64,000 bases of DNA, from the NCBI GenBank assembly GCA_001179505.1, contig CDMY01000244.1, positions 62,001 through 126,000 of the forward strand, in the 5' to 3' direction. This document shows, one piece after another, positions 6,430 through 35,502 of this stretch; the first letter of the stretch is position 1, and every line of letters starts with the position of its first letter. This DNA comes from Vitrella brassicaformis CCMP3155 (lineage: Eukaryota; Protista; Chromerida). The notes beneath the pieces are model-generated. The model was not told the DNA's origin, did no database searches, and saw only the letters and a list, made by a program, of their open reading frames with translations. Position numbers and translations under genes: made by a program.

Positions 6430-6729
6430 NNNNNNNNNNNNNNNNNNNNNNNNNNNNNNNNNNNNNNNNNNNNNNNNNNNNNNNNNNNNNNNNNNNNNNN
6501 NNNNNNNNNNNNNNNNNNNNNNNNNNNNNNNNNNNNNNNNNNNNNNNNNNNNNNNNNNNNNNNNNNNNNNNNNNNNNNNNNNNNNNNNNNNNNNNNNNNN
6601 NNNNNNNNNNNNNNNNNNNNNNNNNNNNNNNNNNNNNNNNNNNNNNNNNNNNNNNNNNNNNNNNNNNNNNNNNNNNNNNNNNNNNNNNNNNNNNNNNNNN
6701 NNNNNNNNNNNNNNNNNNNNNNNNNNNNN
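6430..6729. other. Assembly gap (300 N)
   Basis: N run; both flanks read C12-GGCA. Confidence 0.99.
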
Positions 6730-7361: not shown

Positions 7362-10300
7362 TTATCGCCTGAAGCTTGGCGCACACCCGACGTTCATGCT
7401 TCGGCGCGCCTTGCTGCAGCTCTTGCCCTTGATGCTGGCCTTGGTCAGGGCGTCAAAACGCTGGTCCTCCTCGTCAAGGGCGAAGTCACCAATGGATGCG
7501 GGCACCGACTTGATGGCGCTCAGCCGGCTCCTGTTGGCGAGTACCATCCTCCACATGGCCTGGGACGACCGGCGGGAGAGGGGGGAGAGATTGAGCTTCC
7601 TGTACAGCCGCTTGACGCGGTCCACGGGATTCTTCAAGAGGTCACTCAGCGTCACGTCGGCGAACTGGGCCTTGAGGTGCGGGTTGCGCCTCCTGAAGTC
7701 AGCCGCGGCCTTGGCGTTGGTCGCCATCTGGTGAAGCTCCCTCTCGGCCACCTTGGATGCGTCGACACTCATCAGGCCACGGCGGAGGGACAGCACCTCC
7801 TGACACCGACCAGCAACCGTCTCGCTCCCATCCCTGACATCATACACGCAGGCAGAAAAACCAACCAACATGATAAGGATGACCATCAACATACATACGT
7901 TTCGTTCCTTCCTTGTGCGTTCCCCTACGTACCTGTGGGCGAAGATGACCTTAGCGTCAGGGTATGTCGCCAAGATATCGTCGAGGTGGCCCACATGGTC
8001 TGTCGAAGCCAGGAGCCACCTCTTGTGCTCGCATCCGTGCTGCCACTGCAGGTGCTGCAGGAAGGTCTTATGGAATGCGTAGCCCTCCTGCGCCTCGGAC
8101 CCACTGTTGTCTGACAGCCACGACTCGTACTCGGGGGCGTCGAATTGCGTCGCCAGGAAACTGTCTCGCAGCGAGTTTTGCAGTATCATTGAGTCGTCGA
8201 ACGCCATGTCGGCTTTGCGAGGGCCGAGGCGGTTGAGGTAGTCGTTGGAACCAAACATCAGGTCCATGGCCACCTGGGCTGGTGCAAGGCGACAATCCTG
8301 CACACACATACACCCAAAGACATGAAGGACAGCAAGAGGTAAGTAAGGGATAGGACTCGTCGGTTGAGCATCTTCTCTCTTCCCCTCACTCACCGCTTCG
8401 GATGATGCCTGCACGAACTCTCCATGCTCGCCGAAGGGGTGAAGCATCTCACTGAATGTCGGCGCCCTGTTGCCCTCATCGCAGGCCAGCAGCTGCTGCG
8501 TGAGAGTCACCGACACTCGGTCGAAGCCGACAATGAACAGGGGCTGCTTGATCTGCTGGCGCCGGATGGCGGGGTGGGTGTGGGCCCTGTCAGCCATGTG
8601 CAGGAGGTTGCAGAAGGTCTGGCGCACTCTCTGCGCTAGCAGGAACTTGCCCAGGAAGGTCATGTTATGGCTCTCCTTGAGTGCCGACTCCATCAGGACA
8701 CCAGCAGCCTCAAGCACATCCTCCTCGCCACTCAGCTGCCTTAGGCCCGTCTGTCGCCGAACCATGTCGAGCAGCGCCTTCGGCTCCAGGGTGAGGGCCT
8801 TGGCATCACTGGGCAGCAGCTCCTGGCTGATGAGGTAGCGGAAGGACGCTTCCATGAGCTCCTTGGCGCCAGGCCAGCTGACCTCGATGTCCTCTGACGC
8901 ATTGGATGTGCGGATGGGGACCTCTGTGCGCTCCGCTGCGACGTCGTCGTACCAGTACTTCTGCCAGTGCCGCATGACGGGCACGTGGTTGAAGATTGGC
9001 GACTCGGGGCCCCTCGCCTTGATGGCCGCCGTGAAGTCCTCGAAGCTCACGGGCTTGATGGGCAGGCCCCAGGCTGCAGTCCAAGCCACCAGCTGCGACC
9101 TGATGGAAGCAAACGAGACGACACGACACATGAGCAATGCGAAATCAATGCCCTTGTGTGTCTCGTTGTTTGCTTACTCGGTGAGAGCGGCTGGGTTGGC
9201 GAGGTGGTAGAACCAGTGCTTTCTGTTCTCCTTGAAGGAGAGGGCGACGATCAGCTCGGCGACCATGTCGATGGGGGTGTTGTTGGCCCAGCTGGCAGAC
9301 TGCGGGAAGACACCCTCCTGGATGTAGCTCATGATGAGGGCAGTGGCGATATTGGACATGCCCGTGAAGCCAGTCGAGATGGCCATGTTGGTGTTGGGCA
9401 GCCGGTAGATGGTCACTGGCAGCCCCTGGTCACGTGCCTCCCTAAGCACCTCCTCGCACACGTACTTGCTCCAGGGGTAGCCCATCTGCTGTGGCGGGAA
9501 AACCTTGGTCATGTCCTCGATGGACGGCGGGGCGCCCTCCACGAGCTCCTCATCGGCAAACTCCTTGGTGAAATTGGAATCTGTTCAAACACAACAGCAG
9601 ATAAAAAGAATTCACGAATGGATGGATGGATGGATGGAAGGTGTGGCGGCGTCACTGCGTGTCGTGTGTGTCTTCTGCCTCACTCACCGAATGCCGGGAA
9701 GATGCCCAGCGTGGAGACGAAGTGCAGGGGCTTGATGCGGTCACAGGTGCAGAGCTCGATCATGAAGAGGAGGGGGAGGGTGTTGGCCAGTCGCGCGCGG
9801 CTGTACGCCTGGTACAGGCTGATGTTGGCGCCAGTGTGGTACACCGCGTCGATGGTTTCGCAGAGAGTTGAGAACTTCTCCTGCCCCAGACCAAAGAGCT
9901 CCTTGCTCAAGTCGCCCAACAGCACCACAATCCGAGCAGCCCACTCCTCCTTCCAAATCTTGGCCTCCACGCAGGCCTCCCTGATGCGCTCCATCCCCTC
10001 CTTGTGGTTCTTGGCACGGACGATACAGTGGACGGTGAGTCTCTTGCCGTCCACATTCCTCTCGAGAAGCGAGGCAAGCTGGAAACGGCCCACAATGCCG
10101 GTCACCCCGGTCAGCAGCACGTTGCTGTACTCGTGAGGCTGCTTGGCCGGTGCCGCCCCAGAGAGATCGATGCTCAGGTTTGCCTTGAGCTCAGCAAGGT
10201 CATCAAGGGGATGGATGGCGGCGTCGCTGGCCGTGCGCTTGGCCGACGTAGAGCGGGTGGTGCTGATGAAGCTGATGTCAGGGACGACGTGTGCGGTGTC

Positions 10301-13300
10301 CATCTCCTGCGCCTGCTCGAGGATGAACTTGGACATGGTGCTGATGGTGGGGTTGTCGAAGAGCAGGGTGGGCGACAGGGTGATGCCCGTCATCTTCCTG
10401 ACCGAGTTGCGCAGCTCGATCACGGCGCGTGAGTCGAGGCCCATCTCCATGAGTGGCGTGTCCAGGGCGAGTGTGGTGCTGGAGATGTCCTGCACGACCT
10501 CCATGACCAGGTGCGACATGTCGTCCTGGCTGATCATCTTGAGGTCGATGCTGCTCTTGTCGGAGATGAAGGTCGTCACGTGGCTGTCCGGGGTCACCTC
10601 GCCGTCTGGCTGAGGTGAGTCATCAGCTCCGCGCACCCGATGGCTGTTGTCGCCTTTGGCGGCGGTGCCACTAGGCTTCTTGGGTGAGTCATCCTCCAAA
10701 CCGGCTCCCTTCCAGGTGAAGGCCTGGTGGTTCCACGTCACGGGATTGTCCATCCAGTCCTCCCCTTCCTCCAGCCAAGGCCGGGACACCTTGCCCACTC
10801 TCGCCTCAACCGTCACGTAGGCGTTGGAGCCACCGAAGCCGTAAGCGCCTGTGCCGCCGATGAGGGTGCCCGTCTCGCGGGTCGCTTCGGTCGGCACGAG
10901 CTTGACACCTCCGCCCTCCTCGACCGGCATGATGAAGGGGAAGTCTCCCGCCGAGTCGATCTGGGGCGACAGCTGCTTGAGATGCAGATTGGGAGGCGCC
11001 ATGCCGTGGCGCAGCGTCAAGATGAGCTTGATCAAGTTGGCAATGCCCGTGGCGCCTTCCGTGTGCCCAATGTTGGTCTTGAGGGCCCCCAAGACAAGAG
11101 GCGACGAGGCAGGCCGCTTGCCGAACACACTCTTGAGGGCGCCCATCTCGATGGCGTCGCCCATGATCGTCCCAGTGCCATGCACCTCGGCGTAGCTGAA
11201 AGCGCTCGGCGACAGGTTGGCTTGGTTGAGGGTGTCGCGGATGAGGAGCTGCTGTGCGGGGCCGGAGGGGGCGGTGAGGGAGGCCGAGACGGCGTTGTGG
11301 CTGGTGGCGCTACCGCGGATGATCGCGAAGGGCTCGGCTGCCTTGGGGCGGTCGAGGCGCTGCAGGTAGGCAGCCCCGACACCCTCACCACGGGTGTAGC
11401 CATTGGCGGCGGAGTCGAAGGTCTTCACCTGCCCATCCGCAGACAGAAGCTGAGCCCTGCACACACACACGCAAACACACAGGCGGACGGACAATGAGTG
11501 GATCATTCGTCCGTCTCGTGCAGCCGCCCTGCCCTTTTCTTCTGCCTCACCCTGACAAGGCGATGTAGCTGTGGGGCGTCAACAGCAGGTTCGTCCCGGC
11601 ACAGAGCACTCCATCTTTGCAGGCACCCGCCAGCAGACTCTTGCAGCCCGCGTCGAGGGCCACCAGTGAGGAAGAGCAGGCAGTGTCCAGAGCGAAGGAG
11701 GTGCCCTTGAGCCCGAAGATGTAGCTGAGGCGATTCGCCAGGATCGACTGCGCGCTGCCGGTTGCTGCCAGGGAGCCGCCTTCCTGCTCATGAGACTTCA
11801 TGAGGGCCCAGTCTTGCGCCATGCATCCGACGAACACGCCAATGTTCTTGCCCGACACGGCGGAGAGCTGCTTGTTCTTGGAGAAGAGCCCGCCGCTGTG
11901 GAAGGCCTCGTAGGTCACCTCCAGCAAGTGCCTCTGGTGGGGGTCCATGCCAGCCGCCTCCCGCTGACTGATGCGGAAGAACTGGTTGTCGAAGTTGGCG
12001 ACATTGTCGATGAATGTGCCGGCCAGCGTGTAGTACTTGTTGGGGTCCTCGCCCTTAGGATCATAATACAGAGTCGTGTTCCATCGGTCCTTGGGGATGG
12101 TGGTCACGGCGTCCGTTCCCTCACATAGCAGCTTCCAGAAGCTGCCCAGCGAGTTGATGCCGCCAGGATAGCGGCACCCGATACCCATGACGGCGATGGC
12201 GCTCTCGCCGGTCTCGACGTGGACGACGTCGTCATGGGGGTGGTGGGTGGCTGAGGGGTCGACGTCAGAGCCCGACCGCTTGGCCAGCAGGGCGATCTTC
12301 TCGCCAGCGATGTAGTTGATGAGTGCGTTCATGGTGGGGTAGTCGAACAGCATGGCGATCGACAGCCTGACGCGCAGCTTGCGGGAGACGGCATCCCTGA
12401 ACTCCACCAGGCCCAACGAGTCGATGCCGAGGTCGACGAAGGGCACGTCCAACTGGACGGTGCCTTCCTTGGCCTGGTCCTGCATGATCTCGGTGGCCGT
12501 GTCCGTGATGGTCTGGGTGACGTGCTTAGTGATGGCCTCTGCGTCCATGCTCTTCTCCTCCTTGGTCAGGTGGCACACCTCGTCACCGTCACCCGAGCCC
12601 TCGCTACTCTCCGCGTTAATCTCCTGCCGCATCTGCTCGAAGAAGCGCTGGCTGTCGGGGGGGCGGAGGGAGAGGAAGCTGGACCAGTCGACGCCGATGC
12701 ACCCGACAGTGCCCGTCGTCTCCCTGGCGGCCATGATGTCCCCGAGCAGCTGCAGCCCCACCGCGTTTGTCAGGCCCTTGATTCCCACCTTGGCCAGTTG
12801 CTCCACCACCTGGGGCGACGCCATCCCGCCCTCTGTCCATGGGCCCCACTGGATGCTTTGGGCGGCGAGGCCGCGCGACCGACGGTGGTTGGCGAGGCCG
12901 TCGAGGCAGGCATTGGCGGCCGAGTAGTTGGACTGCTCCATGTTGCCGAAGAGGGACGCAACCGACGAGAACATGACAAAGTGATCCAGAGACGACCCAA
13001 GCAGCGAATGGAAGTTCCACGCACCTTGCACCTGAGGGAGGGACCACAAACAAGATATAAGGACACACACACACACAGACGGAGAAAATGAGTGAGCGGA
13101 CGAATGAGCCTCGGTCGTGGTCACATAGGATACCTTGGCATGGAAGACCTTGTCGATGGTCTCTCGGCTCTGCTTGGCGAGCGGGGCATCGTGCAGCACA
13201 CCCGCAGCGTGGAAGAAGCCCTTGATGGTGACATCCGACAGGGCGTCGACGACCCCCTCGCACTCCTTGAGGGACAACACGTCGCACGCCATGCAGTCGA

Positions 13301-16300
13301 CCTTGATGCCCTTGCTCGCCTTGACCTCCATCAGCTGATCCCAGGCGGCTGACTCCAGGACACTCTGAGAGGGGCTGCCACGTCGGGACAGCAGCACGAT
13401 GTGTGTGGCGCCGTGGTCAGCCAGCCACTTGGCCGTCAGCAGCCCGAGGGAGCCCAGCCCGCCCGAGATGATGTAGCAGCCAGTGTTGGACACCAGTGCA
13501 GAGTGGGCGACGTTGGTCTTGAGAGTCGACTTGATCAGGCGCGGGTAGAAGAGCTCGAGCTTGTCGTCTGCCTGACGCAGGGCGATCTCCCTGATGTCGC
13601 TCGTCTCGGCCTGGATGACCGACTCCACCACAGTCCTGATGACGGTGTCCAGGGCATCATCTGCCGACAGGGCCACGCTCGAGTCCAGGTCGACACATCC
13701 CAAGGGCGCCGGGCGGCCACAGGAGGCAGCCAGCTCCAGCCGCACACTCTTGGCGAAGCCCCACAGGCCAGCATGCCGCGGGATGGTGGCGGTGGACACC
13801 TCACTCTCATCCGTGACGTTGTGGACCCCGTGCGTCAGCAGCCATGTGGGAGCGACCGCCTCCTTCCCCTTCTTCCGGCTGAGCAGTGTGATGAAGGCCT
13901 GGCTGAGAGTCAGGCACTCGCCCAGCACGGCCGTCGGATCGTGGTCCTGGTTCTCCAGGCCGCCCAGGTAGAGGATGGCGTCCCAGGACCCCTGACTGTT
14001 AAGTGCACCGGAGAGCATCGTCTGGAGGTCGTCCGTGTCGGTGCTGCAGAGGCTTCCGAAGGGAACCAAGGTTGACTCGTCGCTCAGACCAAGGCGGAGG
14101 GCATCAAACTTGGCGACCCATTCAGACGGCACGCCCAGCAGCAGCAGCCGGGGACGGTCAAGCACCTCAGTGACATCCTCCTCTTGCTGCTCACGCTCGA
14201 CAGTCGACGTCCACTGGGTCTCCCAGAGCAGGTCAGCTGTGGCGGCAATGTCCATCCGTCTGACCTCTATGCCTTGGAACGAGGCCACTAGCTTGCCGGT
14301 CGCGGCGTCGGTCAAGGTGCAGTTCATCTGGGCTGAGCGCTCCTCCACCTTGATGATCTGCAGGTGGGACCACCAGCGGTCGTTGGGCGAGTGGGAGTAG
14401 GAGAGGGGCACGAACGCCTTGCCGATCCGGAAGAGCACCCACGCCCCGCTGCGGCCCTCGGTGCCATCGTTCTCTCTCCTCTTGTCATGCTCCAAATGAA
14501 TGACGCCCGCGGCGGCCTGGAAGGCGCAGTCCAGGACGCCTGGGTGAGCCATCAGGAAGGGGCCGTCCCTCTTGTCATACTGCTCCAGACACGCGATCGC
14601 CTCTTTGTCGCCCACCCAGCACGACTTGATGGCGCGGAAAGACGGCCCGTACTCGAGGCCCAAGGCGCGCAGCTGCTTGTACATCTCGTCCACGTTGACC
14701 TCCTGCTGGCACCGCTCCTTGACGACCTCGACGGGCTCGACGGGGGGGTGCAGGGCGGCGTCAGCGCCGAACCACAGGGCGCCGTTGGAGGCCTGCTGGG
14801 GGCTGACGATGTGCGCCGCCGAGTGCTGGACGAGCTTGCGCTTCTTGGCGACCGACGACGAGTAGAGAGTGATGGTCGTGCCGCTCTTGGCGCCACTGCC
14901 ACTCTGCTCCTTGACGGACACGTGGAAGCGGACATCGTCAGACACGCTGGAGAAGATTAGGGGGCGCTCGAAGAAAAAACCTGATGATGAAGATGGAACA
15001 TCACAGACACAGCAGAGTGAGCGAAGACGTCAACCACAACCTGGCTCCTTGTTGTGTACACACGCACCTTCGAGGCAGACGATGCCGTCATCCTTGCTGA
15101 TGGTCCGCGCGGCGGAGCAGATGGTTTCCACATACGTGGCGCCTGGGACGATGATAGTGCCGTTGACGACGTGGTCGCTCAGCATCCGCAGGACGTCCCG
15201 GCTCAGACGCCTCTCGAACGACACCTCGCGCGGGTGGGCCGCCGATAGGGACACTTGGGTGGGGCGGCCCAGCAGACAGTGAGAGGACGCGTCGGGTAGT
15301 CCATCCCCGGCCTCTACCGCCTCCAGGGTGTGCTTGGGCCAATCGTAGACCTGGTGGTCCCACTTCATGTCCGTGTGGAGGCGGCCCCGCTCCTCTGCCG
15401 GCTTCCACTCCTTGACGGCCTTGACGACCGAGTCGAGGAGGCCCGAAGCATCCCGCGTCTTGTCATCCATGGCCGCCAGCAGGGTCACGCCACTCTCACG
15501 CTCCTTGATGAAGTTGCGAGCTATCTTGATGAGCGTCGGCTTCGGCCCCACCTCAATGAAGACCACACCCGGGCTGCCGTCGGTTGCCTTGATGGCGCTG
15601 TTGAGCGAGTCCATAAACCTGACAGTCTTGGTGATGTGCTGAGCCCAGTAGTTGGGCGATGTCAGCTGTCCAGCCGATGCTGTCCTGCCCGTGACGGTGG
15701 AAATCAGGGGGATGGAGGGCGACTGCAGGGGGGCCTTGGCGAGCTCGTTGACGATGGCGTCGCGGAAGAGAGGCACGGTCGCGTTCATAAGGGGCGAGTG
15801 GTAGGCGTGGGACACGGGCAGCATCCTGTGCCTATCCTTGTCAATCTTGAGCAGCTCCAGAAGCGCCGACACCTCATCTCTCTTGCCCGCCACCACCACC
15901 CTCTCGGGAGCATTGACACCCGCGATGGCCAGGCTCTCGAATGACGACTTGCCGCTCTTCAGTTGCTTGATGCCCTTGACCACCTCGTCCTCGCCGGCCA
16001 GCAGTGCTGCCATGACACCATCCTCTGACGGTGTGTCCTGCATCAGGCGAGCGCGGGCCACGACCAGAGCGAGCCCCACCTCCAGCGACATGACGCCAGC
16101 AATGGTCGCCGCGACGTATTCGCCGAGAGAGTGGCCGAGGACCATGTCGGGCGACACTCCGCGCTTGATCAGGGACTGGGCGAGGGAGTAGCCGAGGGAG
16201 AAGAGGATGGGCTGTTGGTAGCGCGCCTGGCTCAAGAGACCCTGCAGCTCAGCCTTGGTGGCCTCGTCGTGGGTCTGGGGGTAGATGAGCCCGAGCATCG

Positions 16301-17175
16301 ATCGGGGGAGATGGGGGTCGACCAGCGCCGCACACCGATCCAGGTTGGCGCGGAAGACCTCGTCCGTCTCGTAAAGGTCCTTGCCCATCCCGACGTACTG
16401 GGAGCCCTGGCCCGTGAAGAGGAAGGCGACGCGGGGGCGGGTCTCCTTGTTTTCTTGGGCCGCTGCGGTGTCCTCCTCGGGGGCGTCGAATGGCGAGGAA
16501 AGGATGACGTGTGCGTTGGTGCCCCCGAAGCCGAAGGAGCTGACGCCTGCCACGAGTGCGCCCCCGTTCTTGCGAGTGAGCTGGAAGCCGTCTGCGGCCG
16601 AGGGGAAGACGACTGGGAAGCCCTCTGTGTTGATGTTGGGGTTGAGGGTCTTGAGGTGCAGGTTGGGCGGCACGCGCTGCATCTGGAGGCAGCAGATGGT
16701 CTTCAACACACCAGCCATGCCTGATTATTGAGTTGTGAATGACACAGGAGAGAGAGACCGACATGAGTGTGGTGGGCATGCAAAGGTGGGTGACTCCATC
16801 CAAGGCCTGCCTTGTGTATCCCTCACCTGCTGCTCCTTCAAGATNNNNNNNNNNNNNNNNNNNNNNNNNNNNNNNNNNNNNNNNNNNNNNNNNNNNNNNN
16901 NNNNNNNNNNNNNNNNNNNNNNNNNNNNNNNNNNNNNNNNNNNNNNNNNNNNNNNNNNNNNNNNNNNNNNNNNNNNNNNNNNNNNNNNNNNNNNNNNNNN
17001 NNNNNNNNNNNNNNNNNNNNNNNNNNNNNNNNNNNNNNNNNNNNNNNNNNNNNNNNNNNNNNNNNNNNNNNNNNNNNNNNNNNNNNNNNNNNNNNNNNNN
17101 NNNNNNNNNNNNNNNNNNNNNNNNNNNNNNNNNNNNNNNNNNNNGTTGGGTCCAAGTTGTTGTGCACTGAGTGAC

Positions 17176-17206
<31 letters not shown>

Positions 17207-20200
17207 GGCAGCAGTACACACTCAAGATGGGCCAGCCAGAATCCTCGATTCCGCTGTATTGCATACATGGCGTACCTCTTAAGCCCATGTCTATGTTGTC
17301 GATCGATGGGAAACTACCCGATGCCCAGCCGTCAAAGGGAACCTCAGCGAGACTAACCTCACCACCCCACCCCAGACTATCCCAGCACCAGTCACCGACA
17401 GTGACAGTGCCCACCTCCCTCTCCACGCCCAGGCCTTTCAGAACGCTCCTCCTTTCTTGTGGACTCACTGCTGTCTCGAACTTTACCTCTTTGACGTTGC
17501 CGGGCATCTTCTCTGCCAGCAGTCGTGCCACAGTAACGCCAAGAGCATTGGTCACCTCCAGCTCACTGTCCCTTGATGCAATGGTCACAGATAAGAGCCA
17601 CTTCTGAGCGGCGCCGCCCCACACGGTTAGCCTCAAACGCTCCAGGCCCCGCACACCATCCACAATGGATGAGGTGCCGTCGCGGATGAGCTCGGCAGCC
17701 GCAGAGGCCTCCAAATCATCGGGCACTAAGTGACAACAGACACACGGCAGCAATGCACACACAAGATGAGCCAGCCAGAGTCGTCTCCTGCACTGCATTG
17801 CATACCTCTCACGTCTAGGACTAGGTTATGAATCGATGGATAGCTATCCGATGACCGCTCCTCTGCCGGCTTCCACTCCTTGACGGCCTTGACGACCGAG
17901 TCGAGGAGGCCCGAAGCATCCCGCGTCTTGTCATCCATGGCCGCCAGCACGGTGACCCCGCTCTCACGCTCCTTGATGAAGTTGCGAGCTATCTTGATGA
18001 GCGTCGGCTTCGGCCCCACCTCAATGAAGACCACACCCGGGCTGCCGTCGGCTGCCTTGATGGCGCTGTTGACGGAGTCCATGAACCTGACAGTCTTGGT
18101 GATGTGCTGAGCCCAGTAGTCGGGCGATGTCAGCTGTCCAGCCGATGCTGTCCTGCCCGTGACGGTGGAAATTAGGGGGATGGAGGGCGACTGCAGAGGG
18201 GCCTTGGCGAGCTCGTTGACGATGGCGTCGCGGAAGAGAGGCACCGTCGCGTTCATCAGGGGCGAGTGGTAGGCGTGGGACACGGGCAGCATCCTGTGCC
18301 TATCCTTGTCAATCTTGAGCAGCTCCAGAAGCGCCGACACCTCATCTCTCTTGCCCGCCACCACCACCCTCTCGGGAGCATTGACACCTGCGATGGCCAG
18401 GCTTTCGAATGACGACTTGCCGTTCTTCAGTTGCTTGATGCCCATGACCACCTCGTCCTCGCCCATCACCGCTTGATGCCCGCTGCCGCTGCCGCCGCTC
18501 CGATGGACTACCTGAGCCAGCAGCCGTCAACCTGTGACCACCTGTATGGCGCTATGCATCAGCAGCGTCGGCCACAGCTGCCGTACCACCCTGGTGAGAG
18601 CGACCTGCCCCCTCTGCTGGGCGGCGACGATGACTCGCTCATGGGGTCGGGTGACGAGCTCGACAGACATGGCCTTGGCGGAGGGGAAGGGGGAGGCATG
18701 GATGACTTCGATCCCGTCGGCCACCATCGGCCATCGGACAGCCCCTATGACGGCGCCACGGGATTCGGACCACCTGTGGGCCAGCCGGGGATGGGCAATA
18801 GCGCTCTGTCGCCCATCGCGGAAGATCCATGTGGGCACATCATGACCCGTGGTGAGCGGGGCAGACAATGGGCCCATACCGGTTTGTGTTATGACTACGT
18901 GTGTTCCGATTTCTGCAGGTGATTCCAAGAAGCGTCGTGTGGAGCAGATGAGCCCGTCCCCGCCTTCGGACCATTCACAAGCCCGCCCCAGCGTGTCCTT
19001 CTCAATGAGCACGCTGCAGAACTCCATCATCATAGCCGACCTGAAGAAGAAGATGGAGCAGTGTGAGGAGCTGAGGGGCCGCTTCAACAAGCTCGAGGTG
19101 CAGCAGAACCAGCACTACCAGTCCAACATCACTACCGTCGGCGCTTCGGGCACCTTCGGCCCTCCGCATTTGAGTCAATTTCTGGCTGGTCGTTCCTGGC
19201 TCGGCCCTGCGGGCTTCGCCTTCGCACCACACTAGTCGTTGAAGCGACTGCCACCATGCCCACACCGGCAGCAGTGCTGCCATGACACCATCCTCTGACG
19301 GTGTGTCCTGCATCAGGCGAGCACGGGCCACGACCAGGGCGAGCCCCACCTCCAGCGACTTGACGCCAGCAATGGTCGCCGCGACGTATTCGCCGAGAGA
19401 GTGGCCGAGCACCATGTCGGGCGACACTCCGCGCTTGATGAGGGACTGGGCGAGGGAGTAGCCGAGAGAGAAGAGGATGGGCTGTTGGTAGCGCGCCTGG
19501 CTCAAGAGACCCTGCAGCTCAGCCTTGGTCGCCTCGTCGTGGGTCTGGGGGTAGATGAGCCCGAGCATCGATCGGGGGAGATGGGGGTCGACCAGCGCCG
19601 CACACCGATCCAGGTTGGCGCGGAAGACCTCGTCCGTCTCGTAAAGGTCCTTGCCCATCCCGACGTACTGGGAGCCCTGGCCCGTGAAGAGGAAGGCGAC
19701 GCGGGGGCGGGTCTCCTTGTTTTCTTGGGCCGCTGCGGTGTCCTCCTCGGGGGCGTCGAATGGCGAGGAAAGGATGACGTGTGCGTTGGTGCCCCCGAAG
19801 CCGAAGGAGCTGACGCCTGCCACGAGTGCGCCCCCGTTCTTGCGAGTGAGCTGGAAGCCGTCTGCGGCCGAGGGGAAGACGACTGGGAAGCCCTCTGTGT
19901 TGATGTTGGGGTTGAGGGTCTTGAGGTGCAGGTTGGGCGGCACGCGCTGCATCTGGAGGCAGCAGATGGTCTTCAACACACCAGCCATGCCTGATTATTG
20001 AGTTGTGAATGACACAGGAGAGAGAGACCGACATGAGTGTGGTGGGCATGCAAAGGTGGGTGACTCCATCCAAGGCCTGCCTTGTGTATCCCTCACCTGC
20101 TGCTCCTTCAAGATGCCCGATGTGCGTCTTGACAGCCCCGATGGCCAATGGCGATACGCCAGCGTCACGACGGCTCTTGGCGAAGACGGCCTTGAGGGCG

Positions 20201-23200
20201 GCGACCTCGATGGGATCCCCAAGTGCAGTGCCCGTGCCGTGCGCCTCGAGGAAGTCCACATCATTGGGCTGCAGGCCAGCACTCTTGAGGGCCCCCTTGA
20301 TCACGTTCTGCTGGGCGATGCCATTGGGCGCTGTCAGCGTCACCGCACGGCCACCGTGGTTGACGCACGCCCCTCGAAGCATCGCCAGCACCAGCCTGCC
20401 CCGCTCCTTGGAATCCATGTCGTCAAGGCGCTTCAGCACGATCGCTCCCGCCCCCTCGCCGCGCACGTATCCGTTGGCCGCTGCGTCGAATGTCTTGCAT
20501 CTGGCGTCAGGTGCCATGAAGCGGGCCTTGCAGAGGGCGATTGTCGTGTGTGGGTTGAGCATCGTGTTGATGGCCGCTGCGACGGCGGTCTTGCAGCCGT
20601 TGGGATCCTTGCGGAGCGTTGAGGCGGCCGAGTCGATGGCGACAAGGGAGGACGAGCAGGCCGTGTCGACGGTCATGGAGGGGCCGTGGATGCCGAGGAT
20701 GTAGCTGATCCGGTTGGCGAGGATGGAGGGGGCCGCACTGGTGGCCGTGTAGGAGCTGAAGGCACCCGCACCCATCTTGGCTTGGATCGACGACCACTCG
20801 AACGAGCAGCACCCGACGAACACACCGACGGGCTTCTGCATGAGGGCCTTCTTCTCAAGGCCAGCAGAGTTGAGCGACTCGTAACAAACCTCGAGCAGGA
20901 TGCGCTGCTGCGGGTCCATCGTCTTGGCCTCCACGTCCGACACGCGGAAGAACCCGTTGTCGAACATCTCTGCGTTCTTGATGAAGCCGCCCTCTCGCAC
21001 GTACATGCGGGCCTCTGCGTCTGGATTGGGGTGGTAGAACTCATCGATGTCCCACCGGCTGGCGGGGATCTGCTCAATGGCATCCTTGCCACTGCTGACG
21101 GCGTCCCACAGCTGTGCCAGTGACGAGATGCCGCCGGGCAGGCGGCACGCGGCGCCGATGATGGCGATGTGCCCGGTGGCGTCGGAGACGGCCGTGTTGC
21201 TGAGGACATCCACCGATGGGGTCGGCGAGACGCACTCGGTCCTGCCCTCCAGCTCCTCAACCAGGAAATCAGCAACTGAGACACACAGACAGACAAACAG
21301 ACAGACAGACAGACGAAGAGACGAGGGATAACTACCAGTACAACCTTGCACTTTCGTCTCTCTCTCTCTCTCTGTCTGTGTGTGTGTGTGCTTACTTTGG
21401 TCAAGTGTCTGGTGGCTGAAGAGGATGGTCACATCGATGTTGAGCCCCAGGGCCTTCGAGACTGCCTCGGCAAACTCGACGGCCTTGATGCTGCTCACGC
21501 CGAGCTCCTGGATGGGCGCATGGAAGTCGACGACGCTCTCCTCGACAGCGAAGATCCTGACGGCATTCTCGATGATGACCTTGTCGACGCCCTTGCGCTG
21601 CTCCTGCCGCACTGCGCCATCGCGTGGGGGGGTGAGGGTGATGGTGGCTGGCATGGGTGTGTCCAGGGCGGCCCCCATGGCCTCGACGACGCACGAGGAG
21701 GGGGTGTTGGTCACGGACGGGGGGCGGAGGAGGGACGGCGATGGGGCGGGCGACAGGTTGCGCGGGGGAATGGGCGTCACATCGGGACTGGGGGGTGCGG
21801 CTGCCGACAAGCTCTTGGGGGAGGCTGTGGACGCGCTCGCGGAGTCGTTGACCTCCTTGATGAGGATCTCGTCGTGCAGTACAGTCGAGACCTTGCCGTC
21901 CAGCAGGAGGTCGCGTGTGGTGGACCGGCGCACCTTGCCACTAGTCGTCTGAAGGCGAAAAACCACACCACACCACACCACACACACCCATTGTGGGATC
22001 ACTCAGTGCATCAGATACAGACTGCGCTGTGTTGGTTGGTGTATGTGTGTTGCACTGCACGTACCTTTCGGACACTGCGAGGCTTGACAAGCCAGATGCG
22101 ATAGACGGGAATGCCGATGCGCTGTGAGACGACCTTGGCAATTTCCTTGGCCTTGCTGTGGTAGTCGGGCTTCTCTTGGCCGCCTCCAGTGAGCCAGGCG
22201 AGGAGGCTGGCCGACTGCTGCTGCTTGATCTCGACGCACAGGGCCAGCTGCTCCGTGTCGTCGACATCCAAAGCGAAGGCGACGCTGCAGCCCTTGCGGA
22301 CTTCGGCCACTTCTTCAACCACCTCCTCGATCTGATAGACACACACAACAAATGTGCACACATTCGTCACCCTGACTGACACATTTGCTTACATCTTGCG
22401 GAAACAAGTTGCGGCCGCGGACAATGATCATGTCCTTGATCCTTCCTGCGACGAAGATCTCTCCCTGGTGAAAGAAGCCGCTGTCGCCTGTGCGCAGGTA
22501 GTGCGGCTTGGAGAGCTCGCCGTTGAGGTAGGTGCACTGGCCGCGGAAGGCCTCGGCGGTCTTCTCGGGCAGGTTGAAGTAGCCCCCGGCGGTGCTTGCG
22601 CTTCGGCACCAGATCTCCCCTCTGCGGCCGGGCGGCACCTCCCTGAGTGTCTCAGGGTCCACGATTCTGACCTCTACACCTGGGGGAGGGCCGCCGCAGC
22701 CGACGAACTGAGCCGATGTCACCGAGGGCGGAATCTCACCCTCCAGCAGCTCAACCACACCCTGACAACACCAACAGACACACAACACAGGTGGTCAGGT
22801 GGCTCATGTGTCTGTTTGTTTTGAAAGCCACCTCAGTTCTGAGCTTGTTTGCGTCGACGGTGATAGTTAGTGGATTGTAGTCATAGCCTCGACGGCCGGA
22901 GATGAACAGTGTGTTCTCCGCCATGCCGTAAGCCGGCACAAACAGATTCGGCGTCACTCCTTTCGACGCAAATTTCTGACACACACACGAAACCACAGCC
23001 AGAAATGTATGTTACACGATCTCGCGTGAGAGGTGATAAGACAACCCGCCTACCTTACCTTGACAAACTTGTTGACGGTCGACGCTCTGATGGGTTCGGC
23101 ACCGCAGCAGAAGCCCGCAACGCCGCTGAGGTCGAGTTGGTCGAAGACCTCCTTGAGCTCGGGCTTGTCGAATGCTCGAGTGACGAGCTCGAAGCCGAAA

Positions 23201-24866
23201 TTGGGAGCGCCTGTCGCACCGCACTTGAAGCGTGACACGCCCTGTAGCCACAGGTGGGGTCGCCTGATGAAGTCGAGGGGAGACATCAGATAGGTGGAGA
23301 AGCCGGTGAGGAAGGGAGCACAGAAGAAGCCGACCAGACCTGCACACAGACAGACAGACAGACAGACAGACATTCAACAGACCCATCAGACAGACACGTC
23401 AATGTGATAATGTGGTGGTAGCCTAGCCCCGTGGCTGGCTCGGCCGGCCACTGACTGACCCATGTCGTGGTAGACGGGGAGCCATGAGAAGCAGCTGAGG
23501 TGATAGCCTCTCTTTTGGAGGGTCAGTGCCTTCCGCCGCTTGATGAACTCCGGGAAGTGGTGCAGCGGCATGTTGGTGAGGCACTCGTTGGGTGCATCTG
23601 GATCGTCGAGCTTGGTGTCCGCGCCAAACACTTGCAGACACAGGTGGGCGTTGTGCAGCAAACAGCCGTGAGTCACCATCACTCCTTTCGGCTGCCCAGT
23701 AGACCCTGCAGGCAGACAGACAGACAGACAGACAGAAAGGAGTGAAGCAATATGGTATGGTGAGCATAGCATGTCCGTCTGTCTCTCTCTCTGTCTGTCT
23801 GTTCTTTCGGTCGATGTGTGTGAGGTGAGTGTACCAACCAGATGTGAATTGGAGGAAGGCGAGTGACTCGAGGGTCACGGCGGCCGGCACAAACCCTTGG
23901 GCAGCGGCGCCCATGTTTTTGACGTTGTCGGTAGGGATCCACGTGAGGGAGCTCCACCGACTGTCATGCGCACGGGCAGGCAGGTTGATTATCATCGTCG
24001 CAACACGCCTGTACAGTCTGGTGGATCGGTCGGATCCAAGCCAAGGCACACAAACAGACACATATATGACAGTGACACATGGACCGGCAGGAAGGTCACA
24101 ATCAGGTCAGAGGAAGGAAGAGTGTGTGGGCCGGGTGTGGTTGTGTCTTACTGGTTGGTGAGAACGAACTTGGCCTGGGAGCTCTGGGCGATGTCGCATA
24201 GCCTGGGGATATCCGTTGACAGTTTGTTGGGGTCGGGTGGGTACTGACACACACACGCACACAGAGGCAGGGGAGAAGGAGAGGAAGATTGTGTCGGTTG
24301 GTTCCATGGTCTGTGTGTGTCACTGTACAGGTACATACCACGGGCACTGCCACAATTCCCGACACGACACAGCCCAGGAACGCCGTTATGAAGTCGAGAC
24401 CTACACACAAGACGCGACACACACAAAAAAGATTGGGGCCTGTCAACCAGCCCGCCCTCTCTCCGCTTAGTGAGCGCCTGTGGTCGCTGACTGGCTGGGC
24501 CGGGTGGGTGGCTTGTTTACTCACTTACCGGGTGTGTAGCAGAGGATGACGCGGTCGCCGGCCTCGAGTGCCAGGTCAGCTTTGAAGTATGCACACATGT
24601 TGAGCACCTTGTCCTTGACTTGGCCGAAGGTCAACTCCGTCACCTTCTCGCCCGACCCGTCCAGCCACGTGACGCACATCAGGTCCGGGAAGTCACTCGC
24701 GTGCTGGAACATCATGTTGGCGAAAGGATGGTCACCGTACACGGAGCGGAGACCCTCCAGGTCGGGAAAGGGAGACGTCAGGCCGGACTCCCTGGCGTAA
24801 CCTGGCCACCCATAGCCATGATCACACACAAGGAGACGAGACAATCAGTGATCGATCATCGATGCC

Positions 24867-24900
<34 letters not shown>

Positions 24901-25030
24901 CGTGCGCTGTGGTGTGCTGCGTACCACGTGGCGTGGCAAACGCCTCGTTGTTGTCCTCCATCTCCAAGTTGGGGGTCTTGGTGTCCACGGCCGGAGCAGG
25001 AACATTATCAACAGCGTAGCCGAGCGGCAT
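7362..25030 (-). CDS. Multimodular type I polyketide/fatty acid synthase: FAAL-ACP-KS-AT-DH-KR-ACP-KS-ACP-thioester reductase (R)-sulfotransferase-like; locus interrupted by a partial duplication and a gap
   Basis: FAAL ~24780-21900 (LAFLQFTSGSTGQPKGV, SWLPVYHDMG, YGMAENT, LRTGD, GRIKDMII, TTSGKVRR). ACP ~21580-21400 (LGVSS). KS1 ~21180-19780 (DTACSSS, EAHGTGT, KTHIGH, SSFGFGGTNAH). AT ~16450-15400 (FLFTGQGSQ, GHSLGE, HAYH). DH ~15290-14250 (DHVVNGTIIVP). KR ~13480-12830 (GGLGSLG, AAGVLHD, NYSAAN). ACP ~12520-12310 (LGIDS). KS2 ~12200-10750 (DTACSSS, EVHGTGT, KTNIGH). ACP ~10500-10320 (MGLDS). R ~10130-9150 (LLTGVTGIVG, GYPWSK). ST-like ~8780-7480. ATG at 25030, stop TAA at 7364-7362. Confidence 0.9.
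7480..8780 (-). CDS. C-terminal sulfotransferase-like domain of the PKS (bacterial Stf3/Sulfotransfer_3-like)
   Basis: TFLGKFLL...NLL...HPAIRRQQIKQPLFIVGFDRVSVTLTQQLLACD..NRAP..SE..HP and RWLL...H...LDDILATYPDAKVIFAHRD align by eye with the bacterial sulfotransferase pattern HPEI....I.RPIFI.G.PRTGTT.L..LL..DP..R.P..WE / LK.P.H...L..L...YPDA..I..HRDP. Confidence 0.72.
15387..16844 (-). repeat. Copy A of the duplicated KS1-C-terminus/AT segment (intact reading frame)
   Basis: 15387-15995 aligns with 17855-18463 (offset 2468, scattered substitutions). ~16000-16844 aligns with 19270-20114 (offset 3270), and 16261-16844 looks identical to 19531-20114. Confidence 0.93.
16845..17144. other. Assembly gap (300 N)
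   Basis: N run directly after the duplicated KS exon fragment (HLEGAAG). Confidence 0.99.
17145..17854 (-). pseudogene. Fragment of an unrelated multi-exon repeat-type gene embedded in the PKS locus
   Basis: Two similar exon-end/intron units (SYPSIHNLVLDVR|gtatgc...tag|VPDDLE and SFPSIDNIDMGLR|gtacgc...cag|VHNNLD) with in-phase splice sites. No PKS motifs. Confidence 0.5.
17855..20114 (-). pseudogene. Copy B of the KS1-C-terminus/AT segment; AT disrupted by a ~800 bp insertion and truncated
   Basis: The AT frame breaks after DGVMAALL (~19270), resumes at GEDEVV (18463) and leaves PKS homology after KPAEER (17855). Confidence 0.8.
18476..19235 (+). CDS. Two-exon hypothetical ORF (~230 aa) carried by the insertion in AT copy B
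   Basis: ATG at 18476, GT-AG intron 18852-18918 in phase, TAG at 19233-19235. G/P/D-rich N-terminal half, a KKRR motif and a heptad-like IIIADLKKKMEQCEELRGRFNKLEVQQNQ. Confidence 0.5.
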
Positions 25031-28600: not shown

Positions 28601-29773
28601 ACCCCAAGGCATTCTCTGACAAGTAAGTGAGACAGATACACAGGCAACAGCAAATTTCTCCTACTTCATCTGATGTCACCGAGTGTGTGTGTGTGTGTGT
28701 GTATGCGGTTTGTCTGTTCTGTTCAGGTTGCGTCAGTGGATGAACAGGACCATGATCACCAGCACGCCCTTCAAGCTCTTCAAAACCGACTTCAACTTCA
28801 ACGATGACGGTACGCGCACAAGCTAACGTGGCAGCCTCCCTCCCAGCCGAGCCGAGCCAGCACCTTGATGATGCGTCTTTTGTGTGTGTGTGTGTGTAGG
28901 TGAGTTGGAGGCCTACAAGACCAAGTTCTTCATGCGGGCGTACAGCGACCCGCCCCTGGGAGGCGCACCCCTCATGCAGCGCATCCGCGATAAGTGCGAC
29001 AGAGTGAAGAGGGACCACGGCATCACGGTGGCCACCTTCACCGACGCCTTCGTCTACTACGAGAGCGACCTGATCCTGGTCCCACAGACCCTCGTGCAGC
29101 TGTCCGCCGCCCTCGTGGGCGTCCTCCTCGTCTCCATCTTCCTCCTCCACGGCGCCATCACATGCGCCCTGGTGCTGGTCATGCTGATCAGCATCGACCT
29201 GGGCGTGTTCGGCTTCATGACTGTGTTCGACCTGCCGCTGAATCTCATCACCTCCATCAACCTCGTCGTCTCCATCGGTTAGTGTAGTGAGTGTGTGTGA
29301 TCACGCCACCGTGCCATACGGCACACGAAGCGACGGCGTGTCTGTACTGTATGTATGGCGGCCTGCCGGTTGTCTGTCTCGTGTGTGCAGGGTTCTCTGT
29401 GGACTTCACCACCCACATCTGCCACGCCTACACGCTGGCAGTGGGGCGCACACCAAACCACCGTATGGTGGAGACGATGGCGCTGATGGGTGCCCCCGTG
29501 TTCAGCGGCGGCATGTCCACCTTTCTCGCCTTGACGCCCTTCCTCATCGTTCAACGCTCATACTCATACGACTCGTGGTGCCTCATGATGATACTGGTCG
29601 TGGCCTGCGGCGTCCTCCATGCGCTGGTCTTCCTGCCGGTCATCCTCTCCCTCCTCCCCATCAGCAAGGCCAGGAACCGCACCAATAGCCAGCCCAATCA
29701 GGCCCCGACTGAGGCGCGGGGGCAGGCTGCCAAGGGTCAAGACAACAAGGGCGCTGTGTCACTGCCGGCGTAA
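25675..29773 (+). CDS. Patched/NPC1-like sterol-sensing-domain RND-superfamily transporter, multi-exon
   Basis: TM1 KFIWVTLLLSLSVGTL. SSD helices VTPYLCMGIGVNDLLVI and GLAITITTLANVIAFGIGASTGYTAVVNFC..AVALGFVYIYALTFF. Second repeat with ISIDLGVFGFMTVFDLPLNLITSINLVVSIGFSVDFTTHI and GAPVFSGGMSTFL. ATG at 25675, TAA at 29771-29773. Confidence 0.9.
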
Positions 29774-35094: not shown

Positions 35095-35362
35095 CTTGCT
35101 TGCTTTCTTCTCGAGGGAGAGGGAGGGACTCGAGGGAGGGAGAAGCACGGCCGCTGAAACTGAAGGGAGGCGAGGAAAGATATCTATCAAAGCAATCAAA
35201 AAGATGTCAGCACAAGGACAAGTAGGAAGATGCAAAAGAGCAAAAGCCAGCCTGTGTGTGACAGACCTGATTGTGTAGAGACGAGACCGCTCGCTCCGAT
35301 CTAACGCATCTCCCCCCTGCGAACTCGGAGAGATCGGAGACCGAATGCGAGCTTGCTCTCTC

Positions 35363-35502
35363 AAACCCTACGGGGTTAGGGATGAGAATCAGGGTTCAGA
35401 GTTCAGGGTTCGGCACCCTAATCCCATGAGCCGGTCCACCCACGCGGCACGGTGTGAATCGCGTCAGCCATACTTAGCTTAAAAGCCACAGACATGCTCG
35501 AA
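35363..35502. repeat. Degenerate telomeric repeats (TTAGGG/TTCAGGG) plus a 57-bp conserved core; copy 1
   Basis: Core 35446-35502 matches 38357-38410 with 2 substitutions and 3 indel positions. Confidence 0.75.

What the first reader, a model, noticed from the sequence alone, without database searches (positions are those of the whole stretch)
7362..25030. Megasynthase ending in a reductase-plus-sulfotransferase tandem (FAAL-ACP-KS-AT-DH-KR-ACP-KS-ACP-R-ST)
Seen: every listed domain motif, with the ST-like domain in frame after the thioester reductase once introns are spliced. Established: FAAL-ACP loading and terminal reductases occur in apicomplexan FAS/PKS (e.g. Cryptosporidium FAS1), and cyanobacterial CurM/Ols use ST followed by a thioesterase to make terminal olefins. 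An ST placed after a reductase is a different termination logic, and I do not know it as characterised. Inference: a fatty acid is loaded, extended twice (enoyl, then beta-keto, since no ER is visible), reductively released as an aldehyde or alcohol, and possibly sulfated to an alkyl-sulfate-type lipid.
Basis: partly seen in the sequence, partly recalled or inferred. Interest (0 to 1): 0.9.

Follow-up and report, generated by a model that had tools for sequence, protein, structure and literature searches.

The report
Algal polyketide synthase ending reductase–sulfotransferase
A giant lipid-building enzyme gene of the alga Vitrella brassicaformis really does end in a reductase fused to a sulfotransferase-like domain, but the same tail occurs in Toxoplasma, gregarine and Chromera enzymes and was drawn in a 2013 paper, so this is a new member of a known but biochemically untested kind.

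Summary
The window is Vitrella brassicaformis CCMP3155. On the minus strand (about 24775 to 7362) all the listed domains are present in the stated order. A 78-nt GT..AG intron (9177-9100) holds the in-frame TAA between reductase (R) and sulfotransferase (ST). A transcript contig (L001) reads straight across that splice, so R and ST share one mRNA and one frame.

Two corrections are needed.

1. The gap at 16845-17144 lies between two 97-99% identical copies of the KS-tail and AT. Sequence is not continuous across it, the public annotation splits the gene there, and whether FAAL-to-ST is one transcript is not shown.
2. ACP-R-ST is not a new architecture. It ends megasynthases of Toxoplasma gondii (type I FAS), gregarines, Rhytidocystis, Cardiosporidium, Colpodella, Chromera and at least four other Vitrella loci. 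Bushkin et al. 2013 drew "ST" on coccidian and Cryptosporidium PKS1. Zhu et al. 2010 expressed the CpFAS1 "R domain" with an unrecognised C-terminal half.

The ST is Stf1/Stf9-like (mycobacterial), not CurM-like. Here its PAPS-binding motifs are degenerate: GFDRVSVT instead of GLNRTGTT, and the 3'-phosphate serine is glycine. It is nonetheless under purifying selection (dN/dS 0.28). Reduce-then-sulfate remains plausible but untested.

The parts
22056..24775 (-). FAAL-type adenylation domain, spread over at least 8 exons. The start codon was not located.
   Evidence: AMP-binding and fatty-acid--AMP ligase hits. tblastn with Chromera, Rhytidocystis and Vitrella relatives from their residue 9-22 onward.
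21400..21576 (-). Loading ACP (PP-binding).
   Evidence: Pfam.
20097..21171 (-). KS1, with DTACSSS, HGTGT and HIGH all intact.
   Evidence: Pfam E 1.7e-80. Motifs read in annotated model P0281.
17855..19997 (-). KS-AT linker plus AT copy A, interrupted by an 802-nt insert at 18464-19264.
   Evidence: Acyl_transf_1 profile 2-133 and 143-299 in two different frames. Repeat coordinates.
18476..19232 (+). Antisense nested ORF of about 230 aa with its own GT..AG intron (18851-18917), inside the 802-nt insert.
   Evidence: RNA run X5 contig 18359-19298 shows that skip. ORF reading. No Pfam family.
17145..17854 (-). Copy-A-specific flank. It contains the annotated 151-aa exon X (17726-17274) of no known family, and a second 'intron + exon X' unit that runs into the gap.
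16845..17144 (.). Assembly gap (300 N). Its content is unknown.
15387..16844 (-). Copy B: the last 18 nt of a KS exon, a 99-nt intron (16826-16728), the KS-AT linker and an uninterrupted AT (GHSLGE, HAYH).
14250..15281 (-). DH (HxxxGxxxxP present), with an 87-nt intron at 15065-14979.
   Evidence: PKS_DH_N and PS-DH. Spliced in RNA run X5.
12930..13481 (-). KR. The end coordinate is approximate.
   Evidence: Pfam KR, E 4.3e-53.
12309..12491 (-). ACP of module 1.
   Evidence: Pfam.
10979..12200 (-). KS2 (Cys-His-His intact), with one intron near 11549-11471. No AT follows it.
10322..10480 (-). Terminal ACP.
   Evidence: Pfam.
8790..10114 (-). Thioester reductase (TGVTGIVG, GYPWSKY), with introns at 9687-9581 and 9177-9100. 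The C-terminal subdomain lies after the second intron.
   Evidence: NAD_binding_4 and TIGR01746. Splicing shown in L001.
9100..9177 (-). 78-nt GT..AG intron that contains the in-frame TAA between R and ST.
   Evidence: Sequence. Spliced junction read in transcript L001. Conserved in paralogue CEL93275.
7421..8741 (-). Stf1/Stf9-like sulfotransferase-like domain, with introns at 8393-8298 and 7932-7834.
   Evidence: Pfam. PDB 2ZQ5 and 2Z6V by sequence. AF2 model pLDDT 88.6 and Foldseek TM 0.83.
7362..7364 (-). Stop codon TAA. The 3' UTR reaches at least 6738.

Best explanation
This is the Vitrella brassicaformis member of a conserved apicomplexan/chromerid family of FAAL-primed type I FAS/PKS megasynthases. 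Their C-terminus is an ACP - thioester reductase - Stf1/Stf9-like sulfotransferase cassette.

Shown: the domain order; intact catalytic motifs in KS1, KS2, AT, DH, the ACPs and R; R and ST joined on one spliced mRNA and one frame; the same cassette in many relatives; purifying selection on the ST-like domain.

Inferred mechanism: FAAL adenylates a fatty acid and loads the first ACP. KS1-AT-DH-KR-ACP adds one C2 unit and leaves a 2-enoyl chain, because there is no ER. The AT-less KS2-ACP adds a second C2 unit, giving a beta-keto chain. R releases the chain reductively as an aldehyde or a primary alcohol. The fused ST-like domain then acts on the released alcohol.

In family members with canonical motifs, such as T. 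gondii FAS, that last step is most simply PAPS-dependent O-sulfation. In this copy the PAPS loop and the 3'-phosphate serine are altered, so I put sulfation by this enzyme at about 0.4. The alternative is a retained non-canonical or non-catalytic role. Whether the gene carries one or two AT domains, and what lies in the gap, is unresolved.
For: Domains and motifs.

R-ST on one mRNA: L001 reads the junction CACCGA|GTCGCAG and all four introns are removed. The annotated CEL96740.1 includes R-ST.

Family: 26 representatives at E<1e-30, with matches beginning exactly at the post-intron residue of R. PP-binding, NAD_binding_4 and Sulfotransfer_3 were confirmed in 9 of 9 long relatives scanned. Organisms are listed. 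T. gondii type I FAS matches at 40% identity over 93% of the R-ST region. Rhytidocystis P0402 and Chromera P0024 and P0403 carry AMP-binding through Sulfotransfer_3 in one protein.

Selection: dN/dS against the paralogue locus L082 is 0.278 for ST (347 codons) and 0.292 for R (370 codons).

Fold: pLDDT 88.6; STF1 TM 0.83.

R function: CpFAS1-R reduces very-long-chain acyl thioesters with NADPH (PMC2995488).
Against: PAPS-binding motifs are degenerate. GFDRVSVT replaces GLNRTGTT, LASTDH replaces LKMPFH, and HRDGSETVAG replaces HRDPxExxxS. Only 46 of 66 family-conserved columns are kept, against 66 of 66 in T. gondii. The domain sits on a long stem branch of 0.75.

No transcript links the FAAL-KS1 half to the DH...ST half, and the public annotation has two gene models. 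The gap and the duplicated AT leave the module count open.

No sulfated product is known. The product of any R domain in this family, aldehyde or alcohol, has never been determined.
Confidence: 0.62

Rival explanations
1. The ST-like domain of this gene, and of its chromerid paralogues, is a pseudo-enzyme. It would be kept as a structural, dimerisation or substrate-channelling appendage of the reductase, with no sulfotransfer. The product would be simply a fatty aldehyde or alcohol.
For: The PSB-loop Gly and Thr residues, the Lys of the KxPxH motif and the 3'-phosphate Ser are all lost. 20 of 66 conserved columns are changed. The stem branch is long. Purifying selection fits a structural role equally well. 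CpFAS1-R was active as a reductase when expressed together with its C-terminal half.
Against: The PSB Arg (R113), the invariant His255, the His-Arg of the 3'-PB motif and E136/R157 are retained. A related clade also has Ser at the Gly position but keeps the other motifs, so the loop variant may still bind PAPS.
Confidence: 0.33
2. CurM/Ols-like logic: the ST sulfates a beta-hydroxyl on the ACP-bound chain before release, so that sulfate acts as a leaving group and gives an olefin.
For: ST domains at PKS termini are known to work this way in CurM and Ols. The TgPKS2 preprint cites this as a precedent. One Vitrella transcript (P0009) has KR-ACP-ST with no R.
Against: No thioesterase follows the ST. 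The last module (KS-ACP) has no KR to make a beta-hydroxyl. The family profile matches CurM ST only at E 0.025 and TM 0.45, against 4e-76 and 0.83 for STF1. The ST comes after R, not before the release domain.
Confidence: 0.04
3. The locus is two genes, or the duplication is a mis-assembly. In the first case FAAL-ACP-KS-AT is one product and (KS?)-AT-DH-KR-ACP-KS-ACP-R-ST is another. In the second case the true gene has a single KS-AT-DH, as its paralogue does, and copy A or copy B is an assembly artefact.
For: The public annotation has two models, P0281 and P0151, which break inside AT copy A. Copy B's identity runs to the gap edge. The paralogue L082 has one uninterrupted AT. Contigs diverging at 16547, 16647/19917 and 19773 show further near-identical AT contexts elsewhere in the genome.
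Against: DNA contigs of two runs end 30 nt inside both repeat edges. Copy-A-specific and downstream unique sequence have equal depth: 21.5 against 21.2 in one run and 16.1 against 13.5 in the other. The shared parts are at about 1.6-1.8x. Relatives carry FAAL through ST in one protein or one transcript.
Confidence: 0.3

Closest known systems
Terminal 'R domain' of apicomplexan type I FAS/PKS (Cryptosporidium CpFAS1-R; Toxoplasma gondii type I FAS; Eimeria PKS1)
   Same: FAAL/acyl-ligase loading unit and terminal ACP-R, followed by an Stf-like domain in the same ORF. The T. gondii FAS R-ST region is 40% identical over 93% of this gene's R-ST region. Zhu et al. 2010 describe an R domain of about 780 aa whose second half was 'unique to apicomplexans'. 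Bushkin et al. 2013 label the end 'ST'.
   Different: Those enzymes have 3-4 fully reducing modules (with ER) and canonical PAPS motifs. This gene has one DH-KR module plus an AT-less KS-ACP, no ER, degenerate ST motifs, and a duplicated AT.
Mycobacterial sulfotransferases STF1 (PDB 2ZQ5) and STF9 (PDB 2Z6V)
   Same: Same sequence family and fold: profile E 4.4e-76 and 6.8e-69; Foldseek TM 0.83 and 0.76.
   Different: They are free-standing enzymes of about 380-410 aa with canonical RTGTT loops. Here the domain is fused behind a PKS reductase and its loop is altered.
CurM / Ols ACP-ST-TE off-loading cassette of cyanobacteria
   Same: A sulfotransferase domain at the end of a PKS assembly line.
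   Different: That ST precedes a thioesterase, sulfates a beta-hydroxyl on the ACP-bound chain, and belongs to a distant ST subfamily (E 0.02-0.025, TM 0.42-0.45). Here there is no TE, no terminal KR, and the ST follows R.
TgPKS2 KS-ACP-TR release unit (Toxoplasma gondii)
   Same: A ketosynthase and ACP immediately before the terminal thioester reductase.
   Different: No ST is reported for TgPKS2 in that preprint. The KS2 here keeps all condensation residues.

Membership tests
Type I modular PKS/FAS | KS with Cys-His-His, AT with GHSxG, ACP with the DS(L) serine, and reductive-loop domains, all on one polypeptide. | tested here: met
   Pfam hits. DTACSSS, HGTGT and xIGH are present in both KS domains; GHSLGE and HAYH in AT; HxxxGxxxxP in DH.
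Type I modular PKS/FAS | One continuous transcript and ORF from the loading domain to the release domain. | tested here: inconclusive
   The 3' 4 kb (KS2-ACP-R-ST) is on one transcript. No transcript was found across the AT duplication and gap.
Thioester reductase (SDR-type TR, NAD_binding_4 / TIGR01746) | TGxTGxxG NAD(P)H motif and the GYxxSKWxxE catalytic Tyr/Lys. | tested here: met
   LLTGVTGIVG and GYPWSKYVCEE. NAD_binding_4 E 1.7e-33 and TIGR01746 E 4.9e-38.
PAPS-dependent sulfotransferase (Sulfotransfer_3, Stf1/Stf9-like) | Significant family HMM match and sulfotransferase fold. | tested here: met
   PF13469 57.8 bits against a cut-off of 27. 2ZQ5 E 2.3e-16. AF2 plus Foldseek TM 0.83.
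PAPS-dependent sulfotransferase (Sulfotransfer_3, Stf1/Stf9-like) | 5'-phosphosulfate-binding loop (G-L-x-R-S/T-G-T-T). | tested here: not met
   The loop reads G-F-D-R-V-S-V-T. The Arg and the last Thr are kept; the Gly and two Thr/Ser residues are replaced.
PAPS-dependent sulfotransferase (Sulfotransfer_3, Stf1/Stf9-like) | 3'-phosphate-binding motif H-R-D-P-x(5)-S. | tested here: not met
   The motif reads H-R-D-G-S-E-T-V-A-G. The Arg is kept; the Ser is replaced by Gly and the Pro by Gly.
PAPS-dependent sulfotransferase (Sulfotransfer_3, Stf1/Stf9-like) | Conserved His of the K-x-P-x-H motif and other invariant residues. | tested here: met
   H255, R113, E136, R157, H275 and R276 are retained. 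The Lys and Pro of the motif are lost.
PAPS-dependent sulfotransferase (Sulfotransfer_3, Stf1/Stf9-like) | PAPS binding and sulfuryl transfer. | not testable with these tools
   This needs recombinant protein.
CurM/Ols-type ST-TE olefin off-loading | ST followed by a thioesterase; a beta-hydroxyacyl-ACP substrate; a CurM-type ST. | tested here: not met
   The ORF ends after the ST with no TE. There is no KR in the last module. CurM ST matches only at E 0.025.
Apicomplexan/chromerid FAAL...ACP-R-ST megasynthases | C-terminal PP-binding, NAD_binding_4 and Sulfotransfer_3 in one ORF, with an N-terminal FAAL. | tested here: met
   This gene. Relatives.

The most novel reading that the evidence does not exclude
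Reduce-then-sulfate would be a real and so far undemonstrated chain-termination logic of type I FAS/PKS, conserved from chromerid algae to Toxoplasma and Cryptosporidium. R would make a primary alcohol and the fused Stf1-like domain would convert it to an alkyl sulfate. On a 3-oxo chain such as this gene's predicted product, the sulfate could instead serve as a leaving group. The chromerid copies, with their rebuilt PAPS loop under purifying selection, could have shifted to a different donor or a different reaction.
Probability: 0.3. Interest if true: 0.7.

Novelty: new member of a known kind. Interest (0 to 1): 0.4.

Why it matters
The products of the apicomplexan giant FAS/PKS enzymes are still unknown. 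These enzymes are abundant in Toxoplasma and Eimeria oocysts. The Stf-like domain behind the reductase has been labelled in a figure but never assayed. A free-living, culturable relative with several R-ST genes gives a tractable system for asking whether these enzymes make alkyl sulfates. Comparing canonical (Toxoplasma) with degenerate (chromerid) ST domains gives a built-in test of whether sulfation is the conserved function. For this window itself the main practical value is a corrected gene model and a warning about the duplicated AT and the gap.

Tried and rejected
1. The metagenome-contig scan with the AT-DH frame, meant to fetch Vitrella transcripts, returned only distant bacterial AT hits.

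2. The search for homologous proteins with the AT-DH frame and with the ACP-KS1 frame found no transcript-derived protein crossing the duplication. It found only the annotated upstream model P0281 and paralogues.

3. Read laying on 14900-20300 showed that both repeat contexts exist in DNA and gave some splices. Logan contigs are too short there, and a third and fourth near-identical AT context confuse the depth, so the KS1-to-AT junction in RNA and the gap content stayed unresolved.

4. Exon X (17726-17274) and the nested plus-strand ORF gave no Pfam or Atlas lead.

5. NCBIfam has no model for the ST-like frame.

6. Literature searches for a biochemical test of an R-ST didomain found none. One search for STF1/STF9 papers was uninformative.

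7. The idea that R and ST are separate genes was rejected: the stop lies in a spliced intron.

8. The idea that the ST-like domain is decaying was rejected: dN/dS is 0.28, the same as for R.

9. An exact reconstruction of the paralogue's annotated exons failed. It was replaced by a tblastn-guided codon alignment.
Full report
**Identity and layout**

The window is Vitrella brassicaformis CCMP3155. The C-terminal frame is 100% identical to a member of the cluster of CEL96740.1 / A0A0G4EK11. The gene lies on the minus strand.

Pfam scans of stop-to-stop frames gave this order:
- AMP-binding pieces
- PP-binding
- KS
- KAsynt_C_assoc plus AT
- PKS_DH_N / PS-DH
- KR
- PP-binding
- KS
- PP-binding
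- NAD_binding_4, in two pieces
- Sulfotransfer_3 (57.8 bits, cut-off 27)

NCBIfam calls the adenylation pieces fatty-acid--AMP ligase, and calls the reductase a thioester-reductase domain. Relatives align to FAAL exons from 24775 downward. No ER domain appears. KS1 and KS2 both keep Cys-His-His. AT has GHSLGE and HAYH. DH has HxxxGxxxxP. R has TGVTGIVG and GYPWSKY.

**The R-ST junction**

The frame carrying the end of NAD_binding_4 (9584-9177) and the ST frame (9173-7365) are the same frame, separated by a single TAA. That stop lies in a 78-nt intron with GTAAGC...CAG ends, at 9177-9100.

A 4017-nt transcript contig from a JGI transcriptome (L001) matches the window at 99-100%. It has the introns at 9687-9581, 9177-9100, 8393-8298 and 7932-7834 removed, and it reads CACCGA|GTCGCAG across the R-ST splice.

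L001 has a 10-N scaffolding joint 18 nt upstream of that junction. Both sides of the joint map to the same exon with a 3-nt overlap, so the joint explains why the gene caller split the contig into two ORFs. It does not break the biology.

The paralogue CEL93275 reads ...FTE|SLL... continuously. The refuting condition 'separate transcripts' is therefore not met.

**The gap**

Two segments flanking the N run are near-identical:
- 15994-16844 matches 19265-20114 at 99.06%
- 15387-15995 matches 17855-18463 at 97.2%

Copy B (downstream in the gene) starts at the gap edge. It carries the last 18 nt of a KS exon, the same 99-nt intron, and then an uninterrupted KS-AT linker and AT that runs on into DH.

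Copy A follows KS1 and differs in two ways. Its AT is split by an 802-nt insert (18464-19264). After the AT it diverges into 710 nt with no known domain.

The sequence at the upper gap edge is a 78%-similar second copy of the intron at 17806-17727 plus the first letters of the annotated exon X. A tandem unit therefore runs into the gap. The letters on the two sides are not continuous, and no frame can be carried across.

The public annotation breaks here. P0281 (FAAL-ACP-KS-AT') ends in the insert. P0151 starts in AT copy A and hops the gap with a predicted intron.

Logan contigs of two DNA runs end 30 nt inside both repeat edges. They give equal depth for copy-A-specific sequence and for the unique downstream sequence (21.5 against 21.2 in one run; 16.1 against 13.5 in the other). 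The shared parts are at about 1.6-1.8x, and both variant sets are present. That favours a real duplication over a haplotype artefact.

Two things stop a firm conclusion. Further contigs diverge at 16547, 16647/19917 and 19773, which shows other near-identical AT contexts in the genome. And one contig (19888-20194) sits at single depth. The paralogue locus L082 has a single uninterrupted KS-AT-DH...KS-ACP-R-ST.

**How widespread the tail is**

An exhaustive HMMER search with the 603-aa ST frame found 26 representatives below 1e-30. Many are 1,600-6,700 aa long, and their match sits at the C-terminus and begins at query residue about 22-27, the first residue after the intron.

Pfam confirmed PP-binding, NAD_binding_4 and Sulfotransfer_3 in all nine long relatives tested.

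Sources of these relatives:
- Chromera velia (Cvel_19857, Cvel_3734, Cvel_17954)
- Rhytidocystis
- Selenidium
- Gregarina species, including G. niphandrodes, where the protein is named 'type I fatty acid synthase'
- Digyalum
- Polyplicarium
- Cardiosporidium
- Colpodella
- several Vitrella paralogues

A word-indexed search added T. gondii 'putative type I fatty acid synthase', at 40% identity over 93% of the R-ST region, and another Vitrella protein of 2010 aa. Chromera P0024 and Rhytidocystis P0402 carry FAAL through ST in one protein. Earlier notes of this scan list three more R-ST ends elsewhere in this genome.

**Literature**

Bushkin et al. 2013 (PMC3760245), in the legend of Fig. 2A, draw FAAL and 'sulfotransferase (ST)' at the two ends of Cryptosporidium, Toxoplasma and Eimeria PKS1, and say the ST 'releases' fatty acids.

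Zhu et al. 2010 (PMC2995488) expressed the CpFAS1 R domain of about 780 aa. They noted that its C-terminal half was unique to apicomplexans and had no recognisable motif. They showed NADPH-dependent reduction of very-long-chain acyl-CoA and could not tell aldehyde from alcohol.

I found no paper that tests the ST. The architecture is thus already noted but uncharacterised.

**What kind of ST**

The domain matches PDB 2ZQ5 and 2Z6V by sequence. A 35-sequence family profile scores them at 4.4e-76 and 6.8e-69, but scores CurM ST and Ols ST only at 0.025 and 0.019.

An AlphaFold model (pLDDT 88.6) superposes on M. tuberculosis STF1 (TM 0.83) and M. avium STF9 (TM 0.76), and on CurM ST only at TM 0.45.

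**State of the active site**

| Motif | Canonical members (T. gondii FAS, gregarines, free-standing bacterial STs) | This gene |
|---|---|---|
| 5'-phosphosulfate loop | GLNR(S/T)GTT | GFDRVSVT |
| Acidic motif | PEE(D/E)F | AFDDSM |
| KxPxH motif | LKMPFH | LASTDH |
| 3'-phosphate motif | HRDPxExxxSW | HRDGSETVAGR |

The other Vitrella and Chromera copies are degenerate in their own ways. This agrees with the earlier scan note s1-205839.

Of 66 columns conserved at 80% or more in canonical members, this domain keeps 46, and T. gondii keeps 66. The loop Arg, the invariant His, and the His-Arg of the 3' motif are retained.

In a tree all Vitrella domains form one clade. This gene and CEL93275 sit on a long stem of 0.75.

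Between those two paralogues dN/dS is 0.278 for the ST-like domain and 0.292 for R. The domain is therefore maintained by selection after a burst of change.

**Mechanism**

Shown: the domains, the motifs and the fusion.

Inferred by collinearity:
1. FAAL loads a fatty acid.
2. Module 1 (KS-AT-DH-KR-ACP) gives a 2-enoyl chain extended by C2.
3. The AT-less KS2-ACP gives a 3-oxo chain.
4. R releases an aldehyde or a primary alcohol.
5. The ST-like domain acts on that product.

Sulfation is the simplest reading for the family as a whole. For this copy I give it about 0.4. The main rival is a pseudo-enzyme or altered function.

**Surroundings**

An RND/sterol-sensing (Patched-like) membrane protein gene lies head-to-head with the PKS. 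An ELO elongase gene lies about 10 kb further on. This is suggestive of a lipid locus, but it is unproven.

**Verdict**

Novelty: a new member of a known, uncharacterised kind.

Noticed in passing
window 18359-19298 (+): A plus-strand spliced transcript lies inside the 802-nt insert of AT copy A, antisense to the PKS. It has a GT..AG intron at 18851-18917 and an ORF of about 230 aa. It is seen in RNA run X5 at higher depth than the PKS exons. It matches no Pfam family.
   Followed up: partly
window 17806-17727 and 17273-17145: Two stretches are 78% alike, including the donor-proximal sequence, the acceptor, and the first letters of the following exon. A tandem 'intron + exon X' unit therefore runs into the assembly gap. 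Exon X (151 aa, part of the annotated CEL96740.1) has no recognisable family.
   Followed up: partly
window 26934-29279 (+): A sterol-sensing/Patched (RND-type) membrane protein gene lies head-to-head with the PKS start: SSD E 3.7e-13, plus a weak AcrB hit. This recalls the mycobacterial FadD-Pks-MmpL-Stf arrangement, and the Chromera PKS modules fused to AcrB/SSD domains that are mentioned in PMC7464705.
   Followed up: no
window 34594-35367 (-): An ELO (GNS1/SUR4) fatty-acid elongase frame, E 2.8e-10, lies about 10 kb from the PKS start.
   Followed up: no
window 16497-16647 and 19773-19917: Contigs of DNA and RNA runs match the KS-AT linker and AT at 95% or more and then diverge into other sequence. 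AT segments that are nearly identical therefore exist at further loci in this genome, which suggests concerted evolution among Vitrella PKS genes.
   Followed up: no
P0009 (Vitrella transcript-derived protein): A paralogue has KR-ACP followed directly by the ST-like domain with no reductase. Its sequence ends in what looks like a retained intron.
   Followed up: no
L083, L084 (TARA and other marine metagenome contigs); L085: Intronless genes with KS-AT-DH-ER-KR-ACP-R-ST (3266 aa) and ...ER-KR-ACP-R-ST (2269 aa, next to a PPTase gene) lie on compact contigs of unknown organisms. The R-ST tail therefore also exists outside the sampled apicomplexans and chromerids.
   Followed up: partly
window 6430-6729: A second 300-N gap lies just beyond the 3' end of transcript L001, which ends at 6738, in or after the 3' UTR.
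   Followed up: no
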